Shown: positions 12,061 through 53,079 of the stretch, one piece after another
How positions within the stretch are numbered: position 1 is the stretch's first letter
Layout: each line of letters starts with the position of its first letter
Origin: Selaginella moellendorffii
Lineage: Eukaryota > Plantae > Lycopodiophyta
Direction: 5' to 3'
DNA length: 64,000 bases
NCBI RefSeq assembly: GCF_000143415.4
Contig: NW_003314315.1
Span: forward strand, 558,001 to 622,000
Notes under the pieces: generated by a model
Database searches by the model: none
The model's input: only the letters and a program-made list of their open reading frames with translations
What the model was told of the DNA's origin: nothing
Made by a program: the position numbers and the translations under genes

Positions 12061-12844
12061 CACAAACTAGAAGCGCATTTTTCCCCAGCAAGACGCCCAA
12101 GAACACCATAACACACGCCGCAAAGCCGAGGAGTGGAAGAACAAACGTTAGCACTGCTTGTTTTGTCTCGTGAATGTTTTTAACTGTTACTTGTGGAGGG
12201 GGCTGTCCATGAGCCCTGAAAACGCTGCTCCCAGGAATCGAACTCACATTTCCATCTGGCAGGCTTCGATGCCACGGTGGCGGTCCAACGTCAGCACTGC
12301 TACAGTTCGCGCAAACGCACGGGAACAAGCCCTCGACGATGGAATCGACGGGAGGAGAAGATGGAGCTGCCGAGGAAGAGGATAAATTGAGAATGGGACA
12401 CAGGCATTGCGCGCAAAATAGATCAGGCGTGTGATCGTGGTCAAAGAGTGCCGCGATGCGATCCAGAGTTAGATTGCTCGAGATCCGCAAGAATGCCGAT
12501 TGAGCGCGCCCCGCCTCCATTCGATCCTTACACATGCACCACGAGGAGTGATTCCAGGGCCCCGGCCGGATCCAGCAGCTGCCATGGAGTGGAGAATCTC
12601 TAGGGCTTAGCGACGCTGGAGCGCCTGCTAGAGGGGATGGAGCCGGCGATGGAGCTGAGGATTGCTGCGATGGCGACGATGACGCGTTGTTGGAGGAGAT
12701 TTCCGGGAGGCAGTGGCAGATTTGATTGTGGCGGAGCGGTAATCTCTGCGTGGAGCACAGAGAATTGCTAGAATCTGGAGTGGCGATCGCGAGAACGCTG
12801 CGAGCAAAGAGGAGGCATCCGAGATGGAAGAGGAGGAGATCCAT
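12017..12844 (-). CDS. Intronless Cys-rich cell-surface protein (signal peptide, CxC motifs, Ser/Pro linkers, C-terminal TM helix)
   Basis: MDLLLFHLGCLLFARSVLA signal; CHC, CMC, CLC and CVC motifs; SAPSPAPSP linker; TM AVLTFVLPLLGFAACVMVFLGVLL; short tail. Confidence 0.65.
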   Translation of the reverse strand: MDLLLFHLGCLLFARSVLAIATPDSSNSLCSTQRLPLRHNQICHCLPEISSNNASSSPSQQSSAPSPAPSPLAGAPASLSPRDSPLHGSCWIRPGPWNHSSWCMCKDRMEAGRAQSAFLRISSNLTLDRIAALFDHDHTPDLFCAQCLCPILNLSSSSAAPSSPPVDSIVEGLFPCVCANCSSADVGPPPWHRSLPDGNVSSIPGSSVFRAHGQPPPQVTVKNIHETKQAVLTFVLPLLGFAACVMVFLGVLLGKNALLVCGSSSSSFSHLENSI

Positions 12845-17742: not shown

Positions 17743-18690
17743 CTAAGCAGTAAGAGCCACATTGAGAGAATTTGGAGGCAATGGAACCTCTTCCCAGCTC
17801 ACAATCCTCTTCTCCATGTCCAAAGTACCCTCAAACACAATCGATTTGATGGGGCTGTAGTAGATCTCCACCAGCGCTTTGCTACCACGGACGCTAAACC
17901 CTCCAACCTCGCACACCAGGTCCGCCAGGATCTCCATCAAACTGGTACAAACTCCCGCGCAAGTAAACCTCCTGGTCACCTCGTCCGTCACGAAATCATA
18001 CTCCTCGATCGCCCACAGCTCGATATCGAAGCAAAACCTGGTCGAGACATCGAACTGGCCGACGTCCTCCTTGAGCCAAGTGCCCAGATTCACGCTCGCC
18101 CAAAACTCCCCCGACACGTCGAGCAGATCATCCGGGTCGTCGTCCATCTCGCTCACCATCAGGGGCCGGCCATTGAAGAGGAAGAAGTTGTAACGCTCCT
18201 GGACTTGCAAGCCTCGCGTGGTGAGAAGCTCCCAAGTATCGGTGGCAATGTCGTAGACCTTGCTGGATCCCCGGGACTCCGGAACCACGAAGATCTTGCC
18301 ATTGAAGCCCGCGAACCAAACATACTCCTCGCCCATCAAGCCCGGCATGCTGGAAACGCTCCGCCATGCCGCCGGTTCTTCATGGCCGAGAGCGGCGAGA
18401 TCAAAAACGTGAACTTGGTTGTCTCGCGAGAGCAAGAACACTCTCTTCATGTGGTATACCATCACGCTATCCGGTTGTGGAGGCTTTGGGAGTAGCCTCC
18501 ACTCGGTGCCCCGCTTGGATTGATAGTAAACCTTGTCAACCTTTTTGCTCTCGCTGAAAGAGTGGCACACTATACCTGTGGCGTCGACTCCATCGCCAAG
18601 GTCAGCGTCATTGACCTCGCCGTTGACGCTGACTTGACCGGGGACTAGGTTGACGTACTCGACATCTTCTTCTTCCTGCCACAAAGCCAT
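17743..18690 (-). CDS. Intronless Kelch/F-box-associated beta-propeller-like protein lacking an F-box
   Basis: Kelch-like blades: WRLLPKPP, VHVFDLA...WRSVSSMP, FAGFNGKIFVV, KVYDIATDTWELL, FLFNGRPLMV. Confidence 0.65.
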   Translation of the reverse strand: MALWQEEEDVEYVNLVPGQVSVNGEVNDADLGDGVDATGIVCHSFSESKKVDKVYYQSKRGTEWRLLPKPPQPDSVMVYHMKRVFLLSRDNQVHVFDLAALGHEEPAAWRSVSSMPGLMGEEYVWFAGFNGKIFVVPESRGSSKVYDIATDTWELLTTRGLQVQERYNFFLFNGRPLMVSEMDDDPDDLLDVSGEFWASVNLGTWLKEDVGQFDVSTRFCFDIELWAIEEYDFVTDEVTRRFTCAGVCTSLMEILADLVCEVGGFSVRGSKALVEIYYSPIKSIVFEGTLDMEKRIVSWEEVPLPPNSLNVALTA

Positions 18691-23204: not shown

Positions 23205-25907
23205 ATGGTGGCTGGGAGAACTTCTTCTTCCGGCATTCCATACTGGCCCGTGGACACCGTCCTGAGCATCCAGCTGCTGACCCAATTCGTGGATCGGCTG
23301 GAGCGGCGATGCAGCAATCGAGCAGCGGAGGAGTCCGTCTACGCCAGGCTGATGCGAGCTTGCGGGATCTCGGGAGCCCTCGAGCAGGGACGCCGAGTCC
23401 ACGGCCACGTCCAGCGCCACGCTGACGATCGATCGCTTTTCTTCGGCAACAGGCTGGTAAACATGTACAGGCGATGCAGCAGCCTGGACGAGGCGAGAAA
23501 GGTCTTCGATCGGATGCGCGAGAGGGATGTTGTTTCGTGGACCGCGATGATCTCAGCATATGCCCAGACCGGGCATCAGCGACAGGCACTCGATCTTTTC
23601 ACTGAGATGGCGGGCAGCTCTCTCGACCCAAACCGCGTCACCTTTCTCGCTTTGCTCGAAGCCTGCGACTCGCCCGAGTTCCTGGAAGATGGAAAGCAGA
23701 TCCACGCTCGGGTCTCGGCGCTCCAGCTGCTGGAATCCGACGTTCCGGTGGCAAATGCGGTGATGGGGATGTACAGGAAGTGCGAGAGAGCAGATCTAGC
23801 GATGGCAGTATTTAGCGAAATGCGTGAGAGGGATTTGATTTCCTGGAACAACGCTATTGCAGCAAATGCCGAGTCGGGGGATTACACCTTTACGTTGGCG
23901 CTGCTCAAGAGCATGCAGCTGGAAGGAATGGCGCCGGACAAGGTGACATTCGTGAGCGCACTCAATGCTTGTATTGGATCGCGCTCGCTAAGCAATGGGC
24001 GATTGATCCACGCGCTGGTGCTGGAGCGAGGCATGGAGGGCGATGTAGTGCTGGGCACCGCGCTGGTGACGATGTATGGGCGATGCGGGTGCCTGGAGAG
24101 CGCGCGAGAGATCTTCCACCGCATGCCCGAGAGGAACGTCGTGTCGTGGAACGCGATGGTGGCGTCGTGCACGTTAAACGCCCACTTTGCCGAGGCGATC
24201 GAGCTCTTCAAGAGGATGGTGGCGGTGGCGATGGTGGAGCCGACACGAGTGAGCTTCATCACCGTCCTCAACGCGGTCACCACCCGGGAGGCGCTGGCGG
24301 AGGGGCGGAGGATCCACGAGATGATCCAAGAGCGCCAGCTTCTTTCCCAGATCGAGGTGGCCAACGCGCTAGTGACGATGTATGGCCGGTGTGGCGGCGT
24401 TGGAGACGCCGAGAGAGTCTTCTCCGCGATGGAGAGGCGAGACCTCGTGTCCTGGAACGCGATGATCTCGGCCTATGCCCAGTCCGGCCTCGCTTGCGAG
24501 GTGGTGAATCTCTTCCATAGAATGCGAGCCGAGCGTGTTCCTCCTGATCGCATCACCTTCCTCATGGCTCTGGACGCCTGCGCCGAGATGGGCGATCTGG
24601 ATTCCGGAAGAACAGTCCACCACCTTAGCGTCGAGAGTGGATTTGGATCGTGCATCTCCGTCGCGAACGCCACCATGCATCTCTACTCGAGCTGTTCTTC
24701 TTCCTCGAGTTCTTCTTCGTCGCTCATGGAGGTGGTGGCCGGGATCTTCGAGAGCATGGCCGCCCGCGACGTGATCTCCTGGAACACGATGATCACTGGA
24801 TACGTCCAGGCCGGCGATCCATTCTCGGCTCTCTCCATCTTCAAGCGCATGCTCCTCGAGGGGATCCGCGGGAACCAGGTGACTTTCATGTCCCTCCTCA
24901 GCGTCTGCGACTCGCGAGCTTTACTCCGGCAGGGAGAGACGATCCACCGCTGCGTCATCGATCAAACGCCGGAGCTCTCCTCGGATCCCATCGTCGCCGC
25001 GGCCATCGTCAACATGTATGGCAAATGCGGCGAGCTCGACACTGCTCGCCATCTCTTCGAGGATACGAGCCACCGGAACTTGGCGTCGTGGAACTCGATG
25101 ATCTCGGCCTACGCTCTCCACGGACGAGCCGAGCAGGCGTTTGATCTTTCGGAGCGGATGCGGAGGGAGGGAGTTCTTCCGGACCGAGTGACTTTCATCA
25201 CGCTGCTCAATGCCTGCGTCGCCGGAGGAGCTGTCCGCCAGGGAAAGATGATCCACGCCCGGATCATCGACAGTGGACTGGAGAAGGACACGGTGGTGGC
25301 AAACGCGCTCGTCAACTTCTACTCCAAGTGTGGGAACTTGGACACCGCCACCTCTCTGTTTGGAGCTCTGGATTACCGCGACGTCGTGTCCTGGAACGGG
25401 ATCATCGCTGGCTTTGCACACAACGGCCACGCTCGCGAGGCTCTCAAGTCGATGTGGCTGATGCAGCAGGACGGCGTGAGGCCGGACGCCATAACTTTCC
25501 TCACCATCCTCTCCGCCAGCAGCCATGCCGGCTTCCTCCGCCAAGGTGGTGACGACTTTGTGTCCATGGCAGTGGATCACGAGCTGGAGCGCGGCGTCGA
25601 GCACTACGGCTGCATGATCGACTTGCTGGGACGAGCTGGGAGGATTGGCGAGGCCGAATACTTTGTGAGCGCAATGCGGGACGAGGACAAGGAGGTGTCG
25701 TGGATGACTCTGCTGTCGGCATGTGAGGTGCACGGGGACGAGGAGCGGGCCAAAAGAGTTGCCGGGAGCATTGTGGAGATGAATCCGCAGCACTCGAGCG
25801 CCTATGTGGCTCTCTCCAACTTGTATGCGACTTGTGGTGACGGGAGCTTTCGCTTCAAGAGGCCCAGGCTCAAGAAAAGCTTGCTTGCTAAGTCGAGTTC
25901 TGGATAA
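23205..25907 (+). CDS. PLS-E class PPR protein (candidate organellar RNA editing factor), intronless, 900 aa
   Basis: Repeated P-L-S triplets (VVSWTAMISAYAQ, VTFLALLEAC, ALVTMYGRCG), then EHYGCMIDLLGRAG and the E domain SAYVALSNLYA. No DYW domain. Confidence 0.95.
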   Translation: MVAGRTSSSGIPYWPVDTVLSIQLLTQFVDRLERRCSNRAAEESVYARLMRACGISGALEQGRRVHGHVQRHADDRSLFFGNRLVNMYRRCSSLDEARKVFDRMRERDVVSWTAMISAYAQTGHQRQALDLFTEMAGSSLDPNRVTFLALLEACDSPEFLEDGKQIHARVSALQLLESDVPVANAVMGMYRKCERADLAMAVFSEMRERDLISWNNAIAANAESGDYTFTLALLKSMQLEGMAPDKVTFVSALNACIGSRSLSNGRLIHALVLERGMEGDVVLGTALVTMYGRCGCLESAREIFHRMPERNVVSWNAMVASCTLNAHFAEAIELFKRMVAVAMVEPTRVSFITVLNAVTTREALAEGRRIHEMIQERQLLSQIEVANALVTMYGRCGGVGDAERVFSAMERRDLVSWNAMISAYAQSGLACEVVNLFHRMRAERVPPDRITFLMALDACAEMGDLDSGRTVHHLSVESGFGSCISVANATMHLYSSCSSSSSSSSSLMEVVAGIFESMAARDVISWNTMITGYVQAGDPFSALSIFKRMLLEGIRGNQVTFMSLLSVCDSRALLRQGETIHRCVIDQTPELSSDPIVAAAIVNMYGKCGELDTARHLFEDTSHRNLASWNSMISAYALHGRAEQAFDLSERMRREGVLPDRVTFITLLNACVAGGAVRQGKMIHARIIDSGLEKDTVVANALVNFYSKCGNLDTATSLFGALDYRDVVSWNGIIAGFAHNGHAREALKSMWLMQQDGVRPDAITFLTILSASSHAGFLRQGGDDFVSMAVDHELERGVEHYGCMIDLLGRAGRIGEAEYFVSAMRDEDKEVSWMTLLSACEVHGDEERAKRVAGSIVEMNPQHSSAYVALSNLYATCGDGSFRFKRPRLKKSLLAKSSSG

Positions 25908-26081
25908 CTTACTTCGATCTAGGAGTAGACACACAGTGAAAACATGACAAAGGAAATGTAAATTATGATAACAAAGACGCTGACATATGCTCGACATATC
26001 CTATATCCTGGAATGAAGAGAAGGATTGTCAGTATGATCTCGAGCAAAAAGATATAGTAGACTTCCTACCTCCTGAGTCAG

Positions 26082-29000
26082 CTACATGAGAGATGCCACT
26101 TTTGGACGTAGACTCTTTGCAAGGTCTTCGAAGCTCCTCGAGAGCTGGATCTCGTCAATGCTCACTTGAAACATGCCGTCGCCAGCAGCAGCCATGTCGG
26201 TGAGAAGTTTCTTCGCGGAATTGGTCGGATCGGTCGCAAACATGATGGTGTGAAAGATGAGACTCTGTTCCAGCTTCTTGAGTTGGTTCACGCAGTGCAC
26301 GGGATCCAAACCTCCATAGTTGTCACCATCGCTCAGAAACACCACTGCCGGACTCTTGCCGGCCACTGCTGGATCACTGACCGAGCGAACTAGAATCTCT
26401 TCCACGCGAGCAATCCCGGACGAGTAAACAGTTCCCCCGGCGTCTTCAAAAGTGAGAAGCTTGTCCACCTGAGGCTCGGACATGTGCTCCCGCTCCATCG
26501 CGATCTGTCCGTGGTCGTCGAAGAGAACCACTGACATTACGTCTTGAAGGTTGGCGGCTATGCGGGTCCGAATGAAACGAACCATGGCCTCGAAGACGCA
26601 GCCGAGACGGTTCTCCGGGAACTTGACCATCTTCGGTTTAATGTCCGGCGATCCCATGGATCCTGATCGATCCACCACAAAAATGACATGGCTGGACACG
26701 TCTTGGGAGTGGTTGCACGCAAAGTTGTGTCCGTCTTCAGTCACGTAGCCTGTATAAGAGATTGCTTTGGGAACTGGATCGTGCCACAGCTTCTCAATGC
26801 AATACGATTTTCCTGCAGCCTGGAAAGTACTGCTACCTGCAAAGAAAAAAAAAAATAGAGTCATGCAAACTAAGAGCTTCCAAACGTAGATTACCTGAGC
26901 TGCTACCGCTGCCGTTGTGTTCGGTAGATTGGCAGCAGTGGCCGCAGAGAGCAAACTGCCTCTGGTCGTCTTCCGAGCAGGGATCCTTAAACTTCATGTT
27001 CTTCCAGTACGTTGCATGAGTGAGCTCGTCTTTTGGAGTGTCGAAGTCTGGACCATATCTCACAGTCGCGTGACGAGCTCCTTCCAAAAATTTCACATTG
27101 CCGCAGACACCGTCGTCCTTCTGGTCCTTCTGGCAAACAGCCAGGTGGATATGTCCACGGCCTCTAGCTTTGCAGTGCATCATGCACATCTCAGCCGCAC
27201 CAGACTCTCCCCACTCGTACTTCCGCCCCTCGATCTCGACTTCCTCACTTTCGGCTACGAAAGTTTGCTGCGTCATGTTGCCGTGAGTTGTATCGTGAGG
27301 TCCTGGATGATCGATTGGCAAGTGGCAAAAGTAGCCACACCCCTGGCATTTCGACTCGCAGAAGTGGACGGCATCCGGATTGACGGTGTGCAAATGCTGG
27401 CCTGGATGCTCCAGCTCAAAAGGTGGTATCGGAATGCAGCACAGCTTCTTCTTCCCATTCTGCTCCGAGACGTAGTCGTACTCAAAGGTCGAACGCTTTC
27501 CCTGGAATGTGCGAGTTTTCTTTAGAACTTCAGTGAGAACCACGCAGTTACCCTTGCATTCACAGTCGCTCGGACACTGGTGCTCGTTCCCGCAGAGATG
27601 GACTCTAGCTTTGAGCGAGTGGAAGTGGTCCTCCATAGCACATTTCCTGTTGCACCCGTCCATGGTACACTGGCTGACGCACATCTTCTCGTGGCAGGTA
27701 TGAGTGTGGTCGATCACCGCCAGAGGATGAACGCAGGTATTTCTACACCCCGGAAGCGAGCAGTCCTCCTTGCACATATGCTGCTTCGAGTTGCAAGTGT
27801 GGTCGCCATGGTGTGCGATTTTGAGAGTGCAAGCCTTGTTGCAGTTGGACGACTTCTCCCAGAGGTGGCACGTCTCTCCACAGGTGTGGCTCTTGAGCTT
27901 GCAGTCGTGCAGACCTTCGTGACCAGCCTTGTCCACGCAGCGCTCCATACTCGAAGCCTCCTCCTTGCAAAACGAGCAGTACTGCTTGCAGCGATGGCTA
28001 CCTTTGCAGCTGTGATGACCCGGATGTGCCTTCTCCAAGATGCAACGAAGAAAGCACTGCCCACACTTGCAGCTACACAGCGCCAGTTTGTCTTTCACAT
28101 CCGCCACTGCCGCTGTAACTTCCAGAAGCAGCTTCTGGACATCACCGTCCGATGAGAAGTCACGGGTGTTGGCTTTGATCCAGTTAGCCACTCGAGTCTT
28201 GCGTCTCTCTGCTAGAGATCCCAGGAAATTCTCCAAGGACGCGTGCCATTCTTCGTCGCTACATAGACTCTCTTCACGGGGCACCACCTTCTCAAACTCC
28301 GGTATCAGCTTCTCCAAAACTGTGTTGGCGACGTCCATTTCTTCGTATCCTGCAAGCTGAAGACGTGTGTCGAGAACGTCGAACGTGTGACCACTCACGA
28401 GAATTGGCTCGTCTTCAAACTTGTCCTCCGAATCAAAGTCGACCAGCTCTCTTTTCTCGTCGCCTGCGAGACATCCCAGAGCTATGGCTGTCCTCAAGTG
28501 CTTCCTCAGCATACTGACTTTGAAGCCGATCCTTTTGGTGTCGATAGGAGACCAGTCCTTGGAACAGATCTGTGCTATCACCAGCTTCAAATCTCTCAGG
28601 AAACTCTTCCCAGTCTGGTGCACCGCATCAAGCCCTTCGACAGTCGCAGCGATCTGCGATATGCTCTCGTGGAATTCCTTCCGGTTGAAAGGTGGCATGG
28701 CTGAAATCTCCACAAGACCCCCGTACATTCTCGTCAGGAAGTTGTCTTTGGACTTGTTGCAAATGTAGAGGATCTTCGAGTAGAACTCTTCGCGAAGATC
28801 GTCAACATCAGCTGCATCTACGTCTTTGATGGCCATGTAAAACAGTCCTTTGAAGAGCTTGTCATCGTCTTTCACCAAGCTCACACCGTTTTGGAACCGT
28901 TCGAACACGGCCTCCGTTTCCTTGTCAAGGTGGAAATCCTGGACAAGAAAAACCAACATTTTAGTAACATTGCATTAGCAAACAAATGCAAACTGACCTT

Positions 29001-32000
29001 CTTGTTGAACAAAGTTATGTTGCTGATGGCAGCGTTCAGGATGGCCAGGAACATATCCTCCTGCTCACTTCGCTCGAAGCTTCCAAGTCCTTCAAAATCC
29101 AGAATAATAAACATGCAGTCCTCACTGGCCCGGCAAGTCATCCACACGCCATCCGTGCAGCGTCCACCGGCAACGTCAAGGACCGAGCCACTCAGGTGAT
29201 TCAAGAGGTACGACTTTCCACTGCTCTGCTTCCCCATCGACGAGATAACTTTCACAGGCCCCGTCCAGCTTTCGAGAAGAGCATCGTAGACGCTGAACTG
29301 AATGATGCCTGCAAGCTGGATAGCGTCTCCATAGCTCACGTCTGCTGCCATCTCCAGTCCATCGATCAGAGGCCTCAAGTTGTTGTTTTGAGCTCGAGCG
29401 ATCTGCACCGGAACGAGGGACATCAGCTGACGCAGAAACTCGCTCATGTTCCTGTCCTCTGGCTGCACCAGCATTCCTGAGTCGCTGAAGAACTGCAGAT
29501 CGAAGAGGATCCTCAGGCCCGAGAAATCCTTGCCCTTGTCCTTCTCCAGCTGCTGGACGATTCTTTCCGCATGGCTGGTGAGCTTTCTTCTCGCTACCAT
29601 CGGGTCGCCTCTCAAGACGTCTACCACCAAAGAAAACCGGAGAATCCTCGAAGAATTAATGAGCGGAGGACTCACTGCATACTTGTCGAAGACATGGTAG
29701 ATGTAGTCGAGCTCGTGACACATCGATTCCTCACTTTCTGCTGGTGCCACTTCTGCCTTGGTAAAAGAGTCCCTGACGAGCTGACAGCTTTGGGAGGACA
29801 CCGTTACTTTCAGACGCAGCGACCGCACCACATTCATATCCTCTCCATCACTGATTAGCATCTGCATCTGCGTCCCAAAATTCGCCACCGCAAGCTGGAA
29901 GTTACTCCCATTCTTGACTGCTACTCCCAAGTCCACTGCTTTCATGCGTTCCAAACTGTCGTCGAGTCTGTAAACTTCAGCTGAAAGTGCCGCTCCAACT
30001 TCCGACGGGTCACCACACACTGCGACCAGGCAGAGGCCATCCGGTGTCAAGCAAGGCCTCAGGAACGAAGTTGGAAGCTGGATGACTCGCGGCTTCATCA
30101 TTCCTGGTTGTACCGCTTCAAAAACCCGGACACAGAAGTCCTCGTCCGCCACTAAGAGCTCCTCTCTGCCGGGTATGAACTCCATCCAGGTGATGTTCCT
30201 GCTGCCACCGTAGTTGCTAAGTAGAATCGTGACCCCGTTCCACATCAGCTCGCGGAACGACTCGTCAAACCGGTATACTTTGATCATTGCTCCCGAGACG
30301 TCGTATAGAGCGATGAACCTCAAGACCTCGTCATAAGCAACAAGATCCGCGCCCCTGCTGAAAGTCTTGACGTGCATCTTTGGGCTTGGAACGTTCAAGT
30401 GTGCTCCCAAACTCGGGCATAAGTATATGCTCAGCTGCGAGTTCTGGAGTCCTCTGACGAAAACGAGCACCTGTCCAGACTTCAGGAAGACGACTTTAGA
30501 CAGTCCAAACTCGCTAGCTTCCAAGTCCACCACGTCACACGTTTGAGAGCACTTGAGGGTGATAAAGTGCTCGCGGTTTTGCATCTGAACTTCCAGATCT
30601 TTCTTCGTAGGCAGCAACTCGACAGCTTTCCAGGAGACACGCTCATTCTGAGTGACTTCTCTTCTGAAACGAATCTGGACCCGGTCGCTGTAAGCCTCTG
30701 AAACGCAAGTGTCCAACAAGACTTTCGGACGTGTGTCGTTGGGATCCCACAGTTTCGCTCGAAACTCTGCTACGCATTCGGACTTCTTGGACTTGATAGC
30801 TTGCTTGAGCTGCGCCCGTTTCTCCGTCAACTCAGAAGTGGCCGTTGACTTCAAAAAGCCAAAGAGAACTTCCTCGGAGCTTTCAAAGATACTGCTGAAG
30901 AACTTCATCCGACCAGTTCTGTAGACCTCAGCACACCAAGGAAGTATCTTGTCTTCTGCCTCCAAAACAAATGGTCCAGCTGAAGCCCGTATTTCCTGCC
31001 ACCTTTCCTCGCATAACCTCGCATTGGACGCATACTGGAACTGGTTCTTATCCGCAAGCACGCCATGGAAAAGAACCTCGTCATCTGCTTCTTCGGGAAT
31101 ACCCAGCATAGCTTTGTGAGAGATCACAAAGTCCGCAAGCACAGCTTTCCCCTCCAGAGCCACCACCTCCTTGGCGAACGAATCTATCCATGAGTGAATC
31201 CCGGAATCGACCTTGGTGAAGCCAACATCGTAGATTGTCGACCCTCTCCAGTTCAATATCCCAACTATGACGTCGAGCGTAAATCTGTCGTTCGTGAACA
31301 CTGGACCGGTTCTGCGACGAGAAGAAAGTTTGAAGGTGGCAGTGGAGTCTTTCTCATTAACCGCAGAAAGCATGTCACCATACCGCACCGGACCTGACTT
31401 TCTCATATCAGCGGACAGAATGGTGTAGGAGCCACCCAAATTGTCAAAGGTAACTCTCGAGCCGATGAACACGATTGAACCTCTGTGACTGTTGAGCACG
31501 CTGGCCAGCCTCGACTCCAAAGTCTCCACAGCCTTGGTGTCCAAATCTCGAGTCGACTTGCCTGGCTTATCACAGTATTCCAGAAACTCTAGAATACTTG
31601 CACCACTCAGCTGACATGGTGAAACTTCCCCATGGACTTTCGAGTAGGCCCTCTCCTCCCAGGGAAAATGGAGCCTCAGGTAAGCCTTCAACCCCTCGGC
31701 CAAAGTTTGAAGCACAGATATCTTCCTCACGGTTAGGTAGTCTTCCGTGTTGGAGAGTTTTCTGGACTCCACGTCCATGGATCTATCGAGCGCACGGAGA
31801 CTGTCGGACAACGTGTCAAAACCATTCAGCTTCGCTGCGCTTGCAAAGAGAAGAAAGCCGGTTTCCCTCAGCTTACTGAGGTCGAGGCAGAGATCTTTCC
31901 ACTCCTCCATCTTTCCAGGCATGTATGATCGAGAAACTGTCCATTCTCCAGACACAAGCTTCGTTTCCGGAGTGTACTTCTCGGGAACAAGTAGCGCACA

Positions 32001-32771
32001 GCGATGAAAGCCTTCACTCCACATTGAACAGTATCCAGACGCCACAGGTGGGAGACCTTTCAGGCGCAGCTCAAAGCCTGGTAGCACCCCAAAGTCATTC
32101 TCTGACGAGTTCACGACCGATATCTGCAGCCTCTGGATCCGATTCTTTTTCGCTGCCACCCTCACCACTGAAGAAACATTCGCACCGCCATCTTCAACTT
32201 CCATGCAGCAGTAGACCGCGTCGCAAAGATCCAAGAGGTAGCGTATGAAGTTGCAAGAGATGTCACCCCGTCGTGCAGCCGAGAACTTCTTATCCGGATG
32301 CCAGTAGAAGAGCACAAGCTTCTTCTCCTCGAACAGAGCTCCGTAAAGTCCAGGCAGAAGGGAGTCCTCTTGAAGCTGTGTCACCGTCTCTTCCGGAAGT
32401 TGGCCGTGCTGCAGTAGAACTTTGGCCAGAATGCGTTTGCTCCCGTAGAGCCCCACCGTGGCTAAAACGGAGCTGTCCAACCGAGAGAGATCCAAGATCC
32501 AGCGGCCGCTAGATGATGACTTAACCGAGCCTGGAGCCACAGCGTTGAAGAACGCAAAGATGTCCTCTCGATTGATCAGCACCTTCTCGACGAAGCTCAA
32601 GTCTTGCTTGTCCGACTTTACCCCGATCAAGTTGAAAAGAGCGTTCGCTGGAGGTGATACCTGGACAACTTCCATCGGATCGCCAAGAACAGGAGGTATT
32701 TCATTGTCGACGTAGTCGAGCTCAGGATTCGCGTTCACCATCTCGAAATCGTCAGCCGCGCCTCCTCCCAT
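26082..32771 (-). CDS. Giant (about 2190 aa) VLIG/GBP-like GTPase with Cys/His-rich repeats and a C-terminal vWA domain (exons 32771-28998, 28938-26895, 26836-26082)
   Basis: Two GT-AG introns (28997-28939, 26894-26837) join three ORFs into 6573 nt, or 2190 aa. G1 GKQSSGKS, G2 GRCT, G3 DFEG, G4-like IKDVD; multiple C-x5-H-x-G-x-H-x-C repeats; vWA MIDAS DRSGS...GGT...LSDG. Confidence 0.88.
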
Positions 32772-48499: not shown

Positions 48500-51300
48500 A
48501 ACTGCTCCTAATCCCTTTGTATGAAGTGTTTCAACCGCTACACATGCACAATCTTTGGAGGATTGGCCTACTGGACGTCATACCGAACCTCATAAACTTG
48601 TGGTCCAACTTGCCGCAACACCCGATACGGTCCTTTCCACTGCGCAAGGAGCCCCTTAGATAAACCACATACTGTAAGATGGGGAAAATGGACTAACACC
48701 AAATCATTCACTTTGTACTCCACAGGTGGACGATGATGAGAGTTGTAGCGCCATTGTTGTCCCACTTGTACGCGGCCTAAGTGTTCGGCAAACTCTGCTT
48801 AGACAAGTGGAAGAATGTTTATCAAATATTGACCCCACGACCTAGCATCGGGAGCTCGTGGCAATCGTGAAGATAAACCCAGCTCTGTTGGTAATATTGG
48901 ATCATGACCATATAGGAGTTTATATGGTGAAGCACCAATAGAACTCTACACCCCTGTGACATAGGCATACTGAAAAGATGGCAAATAACCATCCTAATTC
49001 AAATGCTGAAAGTTCACATACTTCGCAATCATCCCTTTGAATGTCCAAATGAGCCGTTCCACCAGACTGTTTGATTGTGGATGATAAGCACTCGTGAAAG
49101 TCTGGTGTATCCCCAACCAAGATGTCAAAACGTGAAATGCCTCAGCCATAAATGTGGGACCATTATTCGAAAGAATCCGCTCTAGACAAGAATGCTGGAA
49201 CACCACTCAATTGAGGAGGAAGTATCCAACAGCAGTTGCAGAGGCGCTAGCAAGAGCACCAACTTGCACCTAACGAGTCAAGTAGTCAGAAGCAATACTA
49301 ACATACTCATTGCTAGCAGTCGACCGTGGAAAAGGTCCCATAAGATGAAATGCCACCAACTCAAATGGACGAGAAATTGCAATTAACTGCAACCGTCCTT
49401 CTGCAGCATAAGGGGGGGTATTACGAGCTTGGCACCAAACACAGTTACGCACATATCGGATAATATCATGTTGCATCTTTGGCCAATAGAAAGACCTGTG
49501 CAGATTCTCAGTCACACAACGATGTCCCATATGCCCACCTGGAATAGAAGAATCATGGTAGGAATGGAAAAATCACAGAATAGAGATAGAAAGCACCACC
49601 AGCTGTAAATGATCATCAAGATCTGTCCCCACCAAATAAAGAAGGCCATCTTCAAAGCGATATTGAGAATGTAAATGCCGAAAAGGCAAGTCATTAGCAA
49701 ATGATGTAGGATTCTCAAACGCATCTCAAAGCCTTCAAATCCATGGCTCAATCTTTTGAGCCTCGCGAACCTCATCAATAGAAGGTAGATCTTGCTCTGC
49801 ACCTTATGGACATTGAACATCAAGTACAGCAACTGCCGACGGCATAAAATCCTTGTTTAGAAAATCCACAAATGTTGGAACAACAGGCTCATAAAAAACA
49901 TGAGAAGAGAGTGGAGAAGGAAGAGGAGCTCGAGAAAGGGCATCAGCATCGGCCATAGAACTCCCTGAGCAATGAACAATATCAAAATCATATATCTAAA
50001 GCTTCAAAGCCCACTGAACAGTACGACCAACCATGTTCTTCCACTTTAATAATGAAGTAATGGTAGCATGGTCACCTTCAAGTAACGTCTGAGAACCATG
50101 TAGATATGCATGAAGTTTTTCAAAACCCCAAATTGCCACTATTAGCGGCAATTAGTAAACACTCCTTCTTTGTTGTAAAGTAATTCACCTCTACTGGTTG
50201 TAACATATGCAATGGGATGATGCTGACCAGACACATTTGGGTTTTCTTGCATCAACACACCTCTAAGACTAATATCAAAAGCATCTACGTGCAAAATAAA
50301 AGGTTGAGTGTAGTAAGGATATGCCAAAATTAGAGGAGTCGTCAACAGTTATTTGAGATCTACAAACACCCACTCACAATCTGAAGACCAAATGAAAGAT
50401 GACATTGATGACTTCAGCAACGCTTGCAACGGTGCAGTGCGATCAGAAAAATGATCCACAAAACAACCGAGATACTACACCTTGCTCAGGAAATGTTGCA
50501 CATCATTCACACACTTCGGAGTAGGGAACTTTAGAATAGCCGCAAGTTTGTCAGGATCAACTTGCAAACCCTCACGAGAAATACGGTACCCAAGATAAAT
50601 TGTGTCTTTGGTCCCAAGCACACACTTTGACTTCTTCAGCTTTAAACCAACGTCCTGTAGCCGATCCAACACTTTACACACATCACGAATGTGCTCCTCC
50701 TACGTTCCTGCCGAGTGAATCAAAACATCATCAATGAAGTCAACAGTCACTTCTAGCATATCACAAAGAACCTCGTCCATCATTTGCTGGAAAGTTGCTG
50801 GAGCATTGTTCAAACCAAACGGCATCACCAAGAACTCATACAAACCAAATGGTGTATAAAAAGTAGTGTTAGGAATATCTTCTTTGGCCATCGGTACTTG
50901 CCAGTACCTAGAAGCCAGATCTAGCTTGGTGAACCAACGACTTCACCCTAGACAATCCAAGAGATCAGCAGTGTGAGGAAGAGGGTACACATCCGGGATC
51001 GTCACTTTGTTTAATGGACGATAGTCAATGCAGAAATGAATACTCTCATTAGGCTTCATCACAAGATGAGGTTCACATGCCCAAGGAATCCGCGACTTCC
51101 AAATAACACCCTTCTCTAACATCTTCTTGATGTTTGCATGTAAAATCTTGATCTCCTTGGGTGACCCATGACGAATAGGAACCTTGATTGGATGAACATG
51201 TCCGGTTGGAATCAGATGACGTATGGCAATCTTAGCCCTAGACGATAGTCAAATTCAAAGAGATCAGAATACTCCTTTATGAGCTGGTCAACCACTGCAA
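48500..51300 (-). mobile_element. Ty3/gypsy LTR retrotransposon pol remnant (RT-RNaseH-integrase), inactivated
   Basis: RT: DLASRYWQV...TTFYTPFGLYEFLVMPFGLNNAPATFQ...FIDDVLI. RNaseH: PFILHVDA. Integrase: HHCC GHMG...YWPKM..CVWCQ, core TSAYHPQSNSLVER, GPY module WKGPYRV. Gypsy domain order, with many stops and frameshifts. Confidence 0.93.
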
Positions 51301-53079
51301 TGCAAAGATTGTCGAAGGGATCAGAAAAGGGAAGAGTAGAATAAGACAGAAACATAGGAAGAAATAATGGGGGAACAAAAGTAATGGAAGCAAAGGTAGA
51401 AATAAAGGGACGAAGAGGTACAGAAGTGAGAAGAATGGATAAAACATAAGGAAGTATGAAATAAGAGGAAGAAAGGAAATGAAAAAAGCTAGATCTAGAC
51501 AATACAAAAAGCTAGATCTAAACCAAAATCCCAAATCCAAGCACTCCCCAATGCAGTTATTGCAGGTGGTGCTTAATAGCTTTAAGATCCTAATATAGTA
51601 GGATACAAAGTGTGGTATATATTATAATTGCCTCTTTGGAAGTCACACTTCATTACCAATGTTGAAAATCTAAAAGGAAAACAAAGTCCAAAGAAAATAT
51701 GTTAAGAAAGCTATTGCATCAATGGTAAATATGATTTTTATAAAACATTATGATAGTGAGAGGGGGAATGTTTTATAATTTGAGATATCTAAAAATATCC
51801 CTAAGCTAGGCTTCAACTCTTACAAACTAGTTTTTCATATGGAATACATATTGCAGTGCATCTTAGAGCATGGAGAATCTAGAGTGTAAGAATGAATATT
51901 TTACATGAGGGGTATATACCTTTTTTCCCTCTTAAGTTTAAGGTATGATGGATAATACATTTATAATGTATTTTAAAGTTTTACCTATAAAGTTTCTCTT
52001 GCCTTAAACTTACATTAAAATGAGAGAGGTGTGTTAGTTGTGCATCATATACACCATCATAAGAGTGTTTGAATCTAAAAAAGTTTTGATTTATAACTAA
52101 ATTATTCATTTACGATTTAAAATTATAAATAACTATAGAGCAAGTTAAGCTTTATTATATAGCACATGGAAGTATAGAGCAAAATTGGGTTTCAAAAAAT
52201 TTGAGGAGTTTGAGTAATTGTCAAATGCAAAATTATAATTCTTATATTTCCCAATAACTTAAGGTAATCATACACCCCTTAAGACGTATTCTAACCTTTA
52301 CAAAAATACTTCTCAATGGAAAGGACAATATTTCTCTAAAAGAAGATAGTAAATTTGCTAGGAGCAAGGTGTATTATGCTTTACCCAAGTAAAAATATTT
52401 CTTTATAAAAAAAGAAAAAAATTCCCCCTAATAATTCCACATAAAACCTAAGGCATTGATAACAAATTATAATAGTTAGTTGGAGTTGGAATGCAACCCC
52501 CAAATTAGTAAGCTCCACTTTTTGACGAAGTGTTGAGCAAAATGGGTAAAAAAATCTTAATTTGTCAATAGTTGCATTTCAATTTAAAAGAAACTTTATT
52601 TTACTATATAGATACACAATTATTTCAATATAAAACCATGGATGTTATGGTCATGTTCAACATCTTTATCAAAAAGAATAAATTAAAATTTTTTGAGAGG
52701 TTTATTGTAAACTAAAAGGTTTGATCTACATAATTTAGATGAGACATTAACTATATTGCCACTATATTTCTCCACATTAATTAATGTTCTTCCTTGGAAA
52801 ACATTAAGAGTGGTTGTGACTATTTAATGTTTAAATGATGAAATTGTGAAAATGGGTGGAATATTGAGGATATATAATGTAATGATTTGATGGAAGTTTA
52901 GCATTTAGATAGTGAGTTATTAAAAATGTGATTACTCCTATTTAAACTTTTGATTTACTAGATATATAAATTTTTAACCTCAAAAATTGCTCTAATCATT
53001 TTAAATATGTACATCGAGGTTATTATGAAATATGGGAGGCCGAAGAAGCTTAAGAGGGACTTTGCTAAATAATTCAACT

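What the first reader, a model, noticed from the sequence alone, without database searches (positions are those of the whole stretch)
26082..32771. Intact 2190-aa giant GTPase (VLIG/GBP-type G domain, Cys/His repeat array, vWA): candidate undescribed immune sensor-effector of non-seed plants
Seen in sequence: three ORFs splice through two canonical 58-59 nt introns into one uninterrupted 2190-aa protein. From N to C it has a globular N-domain (VGLYGSK...LFYWHPD...CNFIRYLLDLCD), a helical stretch, a beta-propeller-like region (LVAYDEVLRFIALYD, ITWMEFIPGREELLVAD, CLTPDGLCLVAV), a complete P-loop GTPase (G1 GKQSSGKS at 29211-29234, G2 GRCT, G3 DFEG, G4-like IKDVD), a helical linker, Cys/His repeats and a vWA domain. 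Established knowledge: QSSGKS...GRCTxG...DxEG is the signature of the GB1/RHD3 clade, in particular the VLIG/GVIN very large inducible GTPases, relatives of the antimicrobial GBPs. I recall similar architectures in fungi and oomycetes and do not know them from angiosperms; this is recall, not a search. Inference: a single-chain oligomerising defence or nonself-recognition GTPase in which propeller and vWA sense and the GTPase switches or assembles. It would be either ancient and lost in seed plants, or horizontally acquired.
Basis: partly seen in the sequence, partly recalled or inferred. Interest (0 to 1): 0.9.

Follow-up and report, generated by a model that had tools for sequence, protein, structure and literature searches.

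The report
Giant GTPase-zinc-vWA gene, Selaginella
This is an intact spikemoss gene for a 2,190-residue soluble GTPase from a large, unstudied protein family found in many eukaryotes, including conifers, but not found in flowering plants; it may act in cell defence, but nobody has tested that.

Summary
Three minus-strand ORFs join through GT-AG introns of 59 and 58 nt into one 2,190-aa frame, collinear with a Selaginella paralogue. Intron 1 sits at the same codon in a fern homologue. RNA reads are few and none crosses a junction.

From N to C terminus:
- a variable helical region
- a 7-bladed beta-propeller
- an active-looking GBP-type G domain
- a ~400-aa Cys/His module (pLDDT 92) with no match among solved structures
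- a vWA domain with a complete MIDAS site

The family is large: 1,163 cluster representatives match the Cys/His module. It occurs in bryophytes, lycophytes, ferns, gymnosperms (several copies on one Cryptomeria chromosome), algae, oomycetes and fungi. No angiosperm or prokaryote member was found. Land plants form one clade, so inheritance with losses fits better than horizontal transfer, and "non-seed plants only" is wrong.

An immune role is plausible but indirect. Relatives carry B-box/RING or kinase domains, a sponge protein joins CARD to the Cys/His module, and Lactarius has a tandem array.

This scan had already reported paralogous copies elsewhere in this genome.

The parts
28998..32771 (-). 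Exon 1 (codons 1-1258), starting at the first ATG after an in-frame stop
   Evidence: collinear with P0001 from residue 1
28939..28997 (-). Intron 1, 59 nt, GT..AG, phase 0, inside the G domain after FNKK
   Evidence: same position in the Ceratopteris gene; several gymnosperm gene models end at FNKK
26895..28938 (-). Exon 2 (codons 1259 to the first base of codon 1940)
26837..26894 (-). Intron 2, 58 nt, GT..AG with a polypyrimidine tract, phase 1, in a variable Gly/Ser linker
   Evidence: not present in the fern or the Selaginella paralogue; no RNA junction read
26082..26836 (-). Exon 3, including the stop codon
31872..32648 (-). N1 domain (aa 42-300): predicted large-G-domain-like fold with a degenerate P-loop (VGLYGSK, 32436-32456); probable pseudo-GTPase
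   Evidence: Model pLDDT about 90. VIA-align matches: Sey1p Z 15.4, GBP1 14.6, GBP2 14.3, atlastin-3 14.1, atlastin-1 14.0, with 201-219 residues aligned. Language-model neighbours are GBP/RHD3/Smg9 clusters at 0.87-0.90. No GKS/T in any of 47 homologues.
30732..31871 (-). Variable region (aa 301-680): helices, a small beta domain (about 430-520) and a long helix (606-674)
   Evidence: least conserved part
29763..30731 (-). Seven-bladed WD40/NHL-like beta-propeller (aa 681-1003)
   Evidence: pLDDT about 95; Foldseek probability 1.0 to G-beta and other WD40 propellers; VIA Z 14-17
29322..29729 (-). Alpha/beta domain just before the G domain (aa 1015-1150)
   Evidence: conserved in 83 of 127 homologues; does not match the N-terminal part of the URGCP Pfam model
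28423..29321 (-). GBP/RHD3/URGCP-type large G domain (aa 1151-1430; the span includes intron 1) with G1-G4 present
28078..28422 (-). Helical linker (aa 1431-1545)
26895..28077 (-). Cys/His module (aa 1546-1939): 44 Cys and 35 His; about five tandem knuckle units, then a beta-hairpin and an alpha/beta part
   Evidence: 28 invariant and 47 near-invariant columns, mostly Cys or His; pLDDT 92; no PDB match; 1,163 representatives match its profile
26085..26702 (-). vWA domain (aa 1985-2190) with a complete MIDAS site: D1995, S1997, S1999, T2075, D2109
   Evidence: VWA_2 30.6 bits against a 27-bit cut-off; MIDAS residues kept in 82-95 of 95 homologues

Best explanation
The locus is an intact gene, transcribed at most weakly in the runs sampled, for a soluble 2,190-residue large GTPase of an old, unstudied eukaryotic family.

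**Shown**
- The domain order is: G-domain-like fold without a P-loop, variable helical region, 7-bladed beta-propeller, alpha/beta domain, GBP-type G domain with all nucleotide-binding motifs, helical linker, about 400-residue Cys/His module, and vWA domain with a complete MIDAS site.
- There are no transmembrane segments.
- The whole order is conserved from fungi to plants.

**Inferred mechanism**
- The active G domain binds GTP and pairs across its nucleotide face, as GBP, atlastin and Sey1 G domains do. This switches the protein between a closed state and an assembled state.
- The N-terminal pseudo-G domain may occupy that face in the same chain and hold the protein closed.
- The propeller and the MIDAS site bind partner or target proteins.
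- The Cys/His module is a rigid scaffold between the switch and the vWA domain.

**Inferred role**
- The most likely role is cell-autonomous defence or another genetic-conflict function, like the animal GBP and GVIN1 GTPases.
For: - **Gene model and conservation:**
- **G motifs.** G, Q, G, K, S of G1, T of G2, D-x-E-G of G3 and D-V of the K-D-V motif are invariant or nearly so across 46 members.
- **Best solved relatives.** GBP5, GBP1 and GBP2 reach E 8e-13, and Sey1p E 1.4e-10.
- **Second G-like fold:**
- **Propeller:**
- **MIDAS conservation:**
- **Solubility.** No hydrophobic stretch of 16 or more residues.
- **Domain accretion in relatives.** B-box plus RING in P0039, B-boxes in Cyanophora P0036, and a weak kinase match in P0048.
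- **Link to a death-fold domain.** CARD plus tandem Cys/His modules in the sponge Sycon.
- **Duplication.** Three family genes lie head to tail in 28.7 kb of Lactarius. Several copies sit on one Cryptomeria chromosome, and several in Ceratopteris and in Glomeromycota.
- **Patchy distribution.** No angiosperm member was found.
- **Precedent.** Human GVIN1 has two large G domains and coats intracellular bacteria (bioRxiv 10.1101/2025.03.24.645074).
Against: - There are no functional data for any family member, and no paper was found.
- Expression is very low and induction is unknown.
- Variation among recent paralogues is only graded: the G domain is 77-90% identical and the propeller 61-79%. 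No hypervariable surface was shown.
- N1 has no sequence similarity to the G domain (hhalign probability 0.2). Its G-like fold rests on one predicted model, and the alignment range also reaches into residues 1040-1124.
- The P-loop lacks the arginine that GBP1 has at the third variable position, so catalysis may differ from GBPs.
- There are no PADLOC hits.
Confidence: 0.45

Rival explanations
1. The protein is a GTP-regulated scaffold for a non-immune process, such as ubiquitin-linked signalling, stress condensates, or RNA or protein quality control. The zinc module and the vWA domain would recruit clients.
For: - The RING/B-box fusions fit any ubiquitin pathway.
- The whole architecture is strongly conserved from fungi to plants and follows a species-like tree. 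That looks more like a conserved cellular machine than a fast-evolving receptor.
- Paralogue variation is only graded.
Against: - The family has been lost repeatedly and is absent from angiosperm hits.
- There are lineage-specific tandem expansions.
- The zinc module has no structural match to NFX1/Fap1 or any other solved fold.
Confidence: 0.27
2. The protein is a housekeeping membrane-remodelling GTPase, similar to RHD3, Sey1 or atlastin.
For: - The G domain matches the RHD3_GTPase model from its first position (31 bits) and matches Sey1p.
- The QSSGKS P-loop lacks the GBP arginine.
Against: - The score is below the RHD3 cut-off of 42.4 bits.
- There is no transmembrane or long hydrophobic segment.
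- No Sey1 three-helix-bundle match was reported.
- Distribution is patchy and copy number varies.
Confidence: 0.1
3. The gene came into plants by horizontal transfer from fungi or oomycetes.
For: Fungi and oomycetes have many copies.
Against: - Land plants form one clade (100% SH-aLRT) with liverworts, moss plus lycophyte, ferns and gymnosperms in roughly species order.
- That clade groups with Cyanophora, Galdieria and unnamed algal sequences, not inside fungi or oomycetes, each of which is monophyletic.
- Mesostigma also has a member.
- An intron position is shared by lycophyte and fern genes.
Confidence: 0.03
4. The locus is a silent or decaying gene copy without function.
For: - Reads are very few and no spliced read was seen.
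Against: - The 6,573-nt frame is uninterrupted.
- All G and MIDAS motifs and the conserved Cys/His positions are kept.
- The G domain is 71% identical to a liverwort protein.
Confidence: 0.05

Closest known systems
Animal very large inducible GTPases (GVIN1/VLIG) and URGCP (Pfam PF25683)
   Same: - The URGCP model is the best Pfam match for all 46 members tested.
- The protein is giant and soluble.
- It has two G-domain-like folds in one chain. Human GVIN1 is predicted to have two large G domains.
- UniProt names some family members 'VLIG-type G domain-containing'.
   Different: - Scores of 31-40 bits in the individually tabulated members are below the 55-bit cut-off, and only the G1-G3 half of the model aligns.
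- The first G-like domain here has no P-loop.
- No propeller, Cys/His module or vWA is reported in the GVIN1 domain description read here.
- No interferon system exists in plants.
Guanylate-binding proteins (GBP1, GBP2, GBP5) and plant GBPLs
   Same: - GBPs are the best solved sequence relatives (E 8e-13 by profile, 5.5e-08 with the window's own sequence).
- P-loop, switch-I Thr and D-x-E-G align with them.
- The Pfam GBP model passes its cut-off (25.9 against 21.1 bits).
   Different: - No GBP_C helical domain was found.
- Ser replaces the P-loop arginine.
- K-D replaces R-D in G4.
- About 1,900 further residues belong to other domains.
RHD3 / Sey1 / atlastin
   Same: - The QSSGKS-type P-loop region matches the RHD3 model from position 1.
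- Sey1p is a profile hit at E 1.4e-10.
   Different: - The score is below the RHD3 cut-off.
- There are no membrane anchors.
- The family is not universal.
Unnamed 'VWFA domain-containing' hypothetical proteins, e.g. SELMODRAFT_408444, Cryptomeria LOC131042113, Rhizophagus GLOIN_2v1781568, Saprolegnia SDRG_04553
   Same: The full domain order is the same, with 30-62% identity in the G, Cys/His and vWA parts. This is the family the window gene belongs to.
   Different: - The window gene is a separate Selaginella paralogue, sister to SELMODRAFT_408444 with 99% SH-aLRT support.
- Its G domain is closer to bryophyte and gymnosperm copies (66-71%) than to its paralogue (58%).

Membership tests
Uncharacterised pseudo-G / propeller / G / Cys-His / vWA family | Collinear full-length alignment with other members | tested here: met
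   Residues 1-2165 align with P0001. N1, propeller, pre-G, G, Cys/His and vWA segments were found in the same order in 72-127 of 127 homologues.
VLIG/URGCP GTPases (PF25683) | Score at or above Pfam's curated cut-off (55 bits) | tested here: not met
   37 bits in the window protein and 31-40 bits in the individually tabulated homologues. All 46 members match below the E threshold, but only model positions about 186-290 of 396 align.
VLIG/URGCP GTPases (PF25683) | G-domain tree placing it with GVIN/URGCP rather than GBP, atlastin or RHD3 | not tested
   No outgroup sequences could be fetched. The short-query search returned only family members.
GBP family | GBP N-terminal G domain above the cut-off (21.1 bits) | tested here: met
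   25.9 bits on exon 1 alone; 45 of 46 members match.
GBP family | C-terminal helical GBP_C domain | tested here: not met
   No GBP_C hit in the window pieces or in four full-length homologues.
GBP family | Arginine in the P-loop (GBP1 position R48) | tested here: not met
   The alignment shows 'kqssGKS' against 'lyrtGKS'.
RHD3/Sey1/atlastin | RHD3_GTPase above the cut-off (42.4 bits), plus membrane anchors | tested here: not met
   31.3 bits; no hydrophobic run of 16 or more residues.
vWA domains with MIDAS | VWA_2 above the cut-off, plus the D-x-S-x-S, T, D metal site | tested here: met
   30.6 bits against a 27-bit cut-off. D1995, S1997, S1999, T2075 and D2109 are kept in 82-95 of 95 members.
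WD40-like beta-propellers | Seven-bladed propeller fold | tested here: met
   Foldseek probability 1.0 with TM by target 0.42-0.53 to G-beta; VIA Z 14-17. No WD40 sequence repeat was found by Pfam, so membership is at fold level only.
NFX1-type zinc fingers | Match to zf-NF-X1, or structural match to the FAP-80S chain (taken from recall to be the NFX1 homologue Fap1) | tested here: not met
   No Pfam hit at E up to 0.1. The only Foldseek row, 7zw0_sh, has E 0.47, and realignment gave Z below 2.

The most novel reading that the evidence does not exclude
This family may be an ancient eukaryote-wide cell-autonomous defence GTPase, a relative of GBPs and GVIN1 that predates interferon. A pseudo-G domain would hold an active G domain closed until the propeller or MIDAS site meets a non-self ligand. 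The protein would then assemble through a zinc module whose fold has no solved relative. Angiosperms would have lost it while gymnosperms expanded it.
Probability: 0.25. Interest if true: 0.85.

Novelty: new variant of a known kind. Interest (0 to 1): 0.62.

Why it matters
**Current picture**
- Large GBP-type GTPases are central to cell-autonomous immunity in animals, and Arabidopsis GBPLs act in plant immunity.
- This family adds a conserved architecture for which the paper searches here found no description. It joins a pseudo-G and active-G pair to a propeller, a confidently predicted zinc module without a solved structural relative, and a MIDAS vWA domain.
- It is widespread in fungi (including mycorrhizal Glomeromycota), oomycete pathogens, algae and all land-plant groups sampled here except angiosperms.

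**If it acts in defence**
- It would give a non-NLR immune component to lineages such as Selaginella.
- It would raise the question of why flowering plants dispensed with it.

**If it does not**
- The zinc module and the two-G-domain arrangement are still worth a structure.

Tried and rejected
- **RNA support for the two junctions.** Too few reads and none at a junction.
- **NFX1/Fap1-like reading of the Cys/His module.** Rejected.
- **Named language-model neighbours of the Cys/His module.** None found.
- **Sequence link between N1 and the G domain.** hhalign was negative, and a PDB profile search gave only one chance-level row.
- **Prokaryotic relatives.** No confirmed match in one genome for each of 185,579 species. 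PADLOC gave no hits, and NCBIfam gave only two weak hits far below their cut-offs.
- **Outgroups for a G-domain tree.** The last word-based search returned only family fragments, so no GBP/atlastin/RHD3/GVIN phylogeny was made.
- **Fold searches with the 1,150-residue model.** In Foldseek and the Atlas these were swamped by the propeller.
- **Literature.** They found nothing on this family.
- **Codon-based selection tests.** Not possible: the only related DNA held is a 46%-identical paralogue.
Full report
**Observation**

Three minus-strand ORFs lie at 28881-32771, 26833-28959 and 26082-26954. Reading the minus strand shows two short introns with canonical ends. Intron 1 is 28939-28997: 59 nt, phase 0, with the junction AAG|GTCAGT...TCCAG|GAT. 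Intron 2 is 26837-26894: 58 nt, phase 1, with GT, an 11-T run and TTTGCAG. Joining exons 32771-28998, 28938-26895 and 26836-26082 gives 6,573 nt and 2,190 codons with no internal stop. The start is the first ATG after an in-frame stop.

**Support for the gene model**

- The spliced protein aligns in one block (residues 1-2165, 46.6% identity) with Selaginella moellendorffii SELMODRAFT_408444, here P0001.
- Junction 1 lies inside a block conserved across plants, FNKK|DFHLDKETEA.
- In a Ceratopteris gene, the DNA after FNKK runs into sequence with stop codons and resumes at DFHMDKETEA. An intron therefore sits at the same codon.
- Several gymnosperm gene models stop at FNKK.
- Intron 2 lies in a variable Gly/Ser linker. 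It is absent from the fern gene and the Selaginella paralogue. It rests on its canonical signals and on the fact that only its removal keeps the frame into the conserved vWA domain.

**RNA evidence**

- RNA evidence is thin. Two 2026 RNA-seq runs, sampled at about 12%, gave 6 and 10 reads. A few of these lie inside exons 1 and 2.
- No read or contig crosses a junction.
- One contig, from a run only guessed to be RNA, covers 27 nt of intron 2.
- Another contig runs from the neighbouring convergent PPR gene to 26606, across the last exon. Part of the depth over exon 3 may therefore belong to that gene.

**Setting**

The neighbours are intron-less PPR genes. A repeat at 48791-51473 is 87% identical to DNA beside P0001 in S. 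moellendorffii. Earlier notes of this scan name the genome as Selaginella. No paralogue lies in the window.

**Anatomy**

- *G domain, Pfam.* On exon 1 Pfam gives URGCP_GTPase 37 bits (cut-off 55), RHD3_GTPase 31.3 (cut-off 42.4) and GBP 25.9 (cut-off 21.1), all at residues 1166-1256. On exon 3 it gives VWA_2 30.6 bits (cut-off 27). Full-length homologues behave the same way. All 46 G domains tested match the URGCP model best.
- *G domain, solved structures.* A profile of the G domain finds GBP5, GBP1 and GBP2 (E 8e-13 to 4e-10) and Sey1p (1.4e-10). The window's own first half of the domain finds GBP2 at 5.5e-08.
- *G motifs.* G1, the switch-I Thr, D-x-E-G and a K-D-V motif are invariant or nearly so. 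The P-loop has Ser where GBP1 has its arginine.
- *vWA.* The MIDAS residues D1995, S1997, S1999, T2075 and D2109 are kept in 82-95 of 95 members.
- *Solubility.* There is no long hydrophobic segment.

**Two structure predictions**

*Cys/His module* (residues 1540-1939, 56-sequence alignment). It has 28 invariant and 47 near-invariant columns, mostly Cys or His. It contains 44 Cys and 35 His. It folds with mean pLDDT 92. It has no PDB match:
- The best Foldseek E-value is 0.47.
- The best Z against 48,161 chains is 2.4.
- No chain reaches Z 2 on a second look.
- In the Atlas it matches only fragments of its own family, and no named cluster is near it.

The tool's own notes warn that a missing match does not prove a new fold, and sub-domains were not searched alone.

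*N-terminal 1,150 residues* (53-sequence alignment, mean pLDDT 81.7):
- Residues 683-1000 form a seven-bladed propeller (Foldseek probability 1.0 to G-beta and other WD40 proteins; VIA Z 14-17).
- The same VIA search returned five G domains from three families whose alignments start at residues 40-44. These are Sey1p (Z 15.4, 216 aligned, rmsd 3.6), GBP1 (14.6), GBP2 (14.3), atlastin-3 (14.1) and atlastin-1 (14.0).
- The order of secondary structure in N1 is a hairpin, a helix, a strand ending in VGLYG, then a helix. From my own recall, not a test here, this matches the start of a GBP G domain.
- Language-model neighbours of residues 40-300 include GBP, RHD3 and Smg8/Smg9 clusters at 0.87-0.90.
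- No homologue has GKS/T at this site.
- Profile comparison with the true G domain is negative.

I therefore read N1 as an old, degenerate G domain, with moderate confidence. The VIA ranges end at 1122-1124, so part of the pre-G domain may pack with it. That point is unresolved.

**Family and history**

- *Members found.* A search with the C-terminal half of P0001 gave 144 proteins of 1,166-3,711 aa. They come from moss, liverworts, lycophyte, ferns, Ginkgo, Taxus and Cryptomeria (many copies, several on one chromosome). They also come from Galdieria, Ulva, dinoflagellates, many oomycetes, Glomeromycota, Basidiomycota, Basidiobolus, a chytrid and Endogone.
- *Angiosperms.* No angiosperm is among the 120 listed. 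Searches tuned to other length ranges also found none.
- *Further members.* Cyanophora and Mesostigma also have members.
- *Census.* An exhaustive profile search with the Cys/His module found 1,163 cluster representatives at E up to 0.001 and 388 at 1e-30.
- *Domain order.* All segments occur in the same order in fungi, algae and plants. The helical region 301-680 is the least conserved and the G domain the most.
- *Prokaryotes.* No relative was confirmed.
- *Tree.* A quick maximum-likelihood tree of 68 G-to-vWA regions puts land plants in one clade (100% SH-aLRT) in roughly species order. The window protein is sister to P0001 (99%). The plant clade sits next to Cyanophora, Galdieria and unnamed algal sequences. 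Fungi and oomycetes are each monophyletic. This fits old vertical descent with many losses, not transfer into plants. The tree is unrooted, two long branches join, and support is SH-aLRT only.

**Clues to function**

- An unnamed relative carries an N-terminal B-box and a RING inserted in the variable region. Cyanophora has B-boxes. Another relative has a weak C-terminal kinase match.
- A 3,777-aa protein of the sponge Sycon has a CARD domain (24.8 bits, cut-off 23.9) followed by tandem Cys/His modules and no detectable G or vWA domain.
- Lactarius quietus has three family genes head to tail in 28.7 kb.
- Human GVIN1, the nearest characterised giant GTPase by Pfam model, is predicted to have two large G domains and coats intracellular Burkholderia.
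- These points make a defence or conflict role the leading idea. All are indirect, and variation among paralogues is only graded.
- No paper on the family was found.

**Verdict**

- The architecture and its presence in fungi and oomycetes are right.
- 'Non-seed plants' and possible horizontal origin are not supported.
- 'VLIG-type' is only the nearest label, below its threshold.
- The immune role is untested.

This scan already reported paralogous copies elsewhere in the genome, one of them followed up with the same family-level conclusion.
- the pseudo-G reading of the N-terminal domain
- the propeller confirmation
- the confident but unmatched zinc module
- the family census
- the tree
- the conserved intron
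- the accessory-domain fusions

Noticed in passing
window 23205-25907 (+), 33146-34951 (+), 35528-37918 (-): Three intron-less PPR genes flank the GTPase gene. The first carries a weak, sub-threshold E-motif match (24.8 bits against a 27.3-bit cut-off).
   Followed up: partly
window 25950-26606: A 1,646-nt transcript-like contig starts inside the upstream PPR gene and runs about 700 nt past its stop, across the last exon of the convergent GTPase gene. The two genes' 3' ends may overlap.
   Followed up: no
window 48791-51473 and L001 16158-18833: A repeat of about 2.7 kb is 87% identical between the window and DNA next to the paralogue in S. moellendorffii. A second copy at 75% lies on the other side of that gene. 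It is probably a transposable element.
   Followed up: no
L001 12496-12830: The public model of SELMODRAFT_408444 seems to have a wrong C-terminus. The window protein aligns in frame up to L001 12571, through the end of the vWA domain, whereas the model jumps to 12669-12830.
   Followed up: partly
P0002, P0003, P0006 (Ginkgo and two proteins from unnamed sources): These gene models of about 1,380 aa end at or just after FNKK, the conserved intron site. They are probably truncated predictions of full-length genes.
   Followed up: no
P0162 (Sycon ciliatum, 3,777 aa): This animal protein has an N-terminal CARD domain and about six tandem copies of the Cys/His module, with no G or vWA domain detected. 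The zinc module is therefore mobile and occurs with a death-fold domain.
   Followed up: partly
P0238, P0241, P0255, P0265, P0278: In these members the first roughly 115 residues of the Cys/His module (the knuckle units) are amplified 6-9 times before a complete module and the vWA domain.
   Followed up: no
window 40001-44000: This AT-rich stretch (GC 0.26-0.33) contrasts with about 0.5 around the genes.
   Followed up: no
window 17743-18690 (-): A 315-aa ORF has a weak, sub-threshold match to the KIB1-4 beta-propeller family.
   Followed up: no
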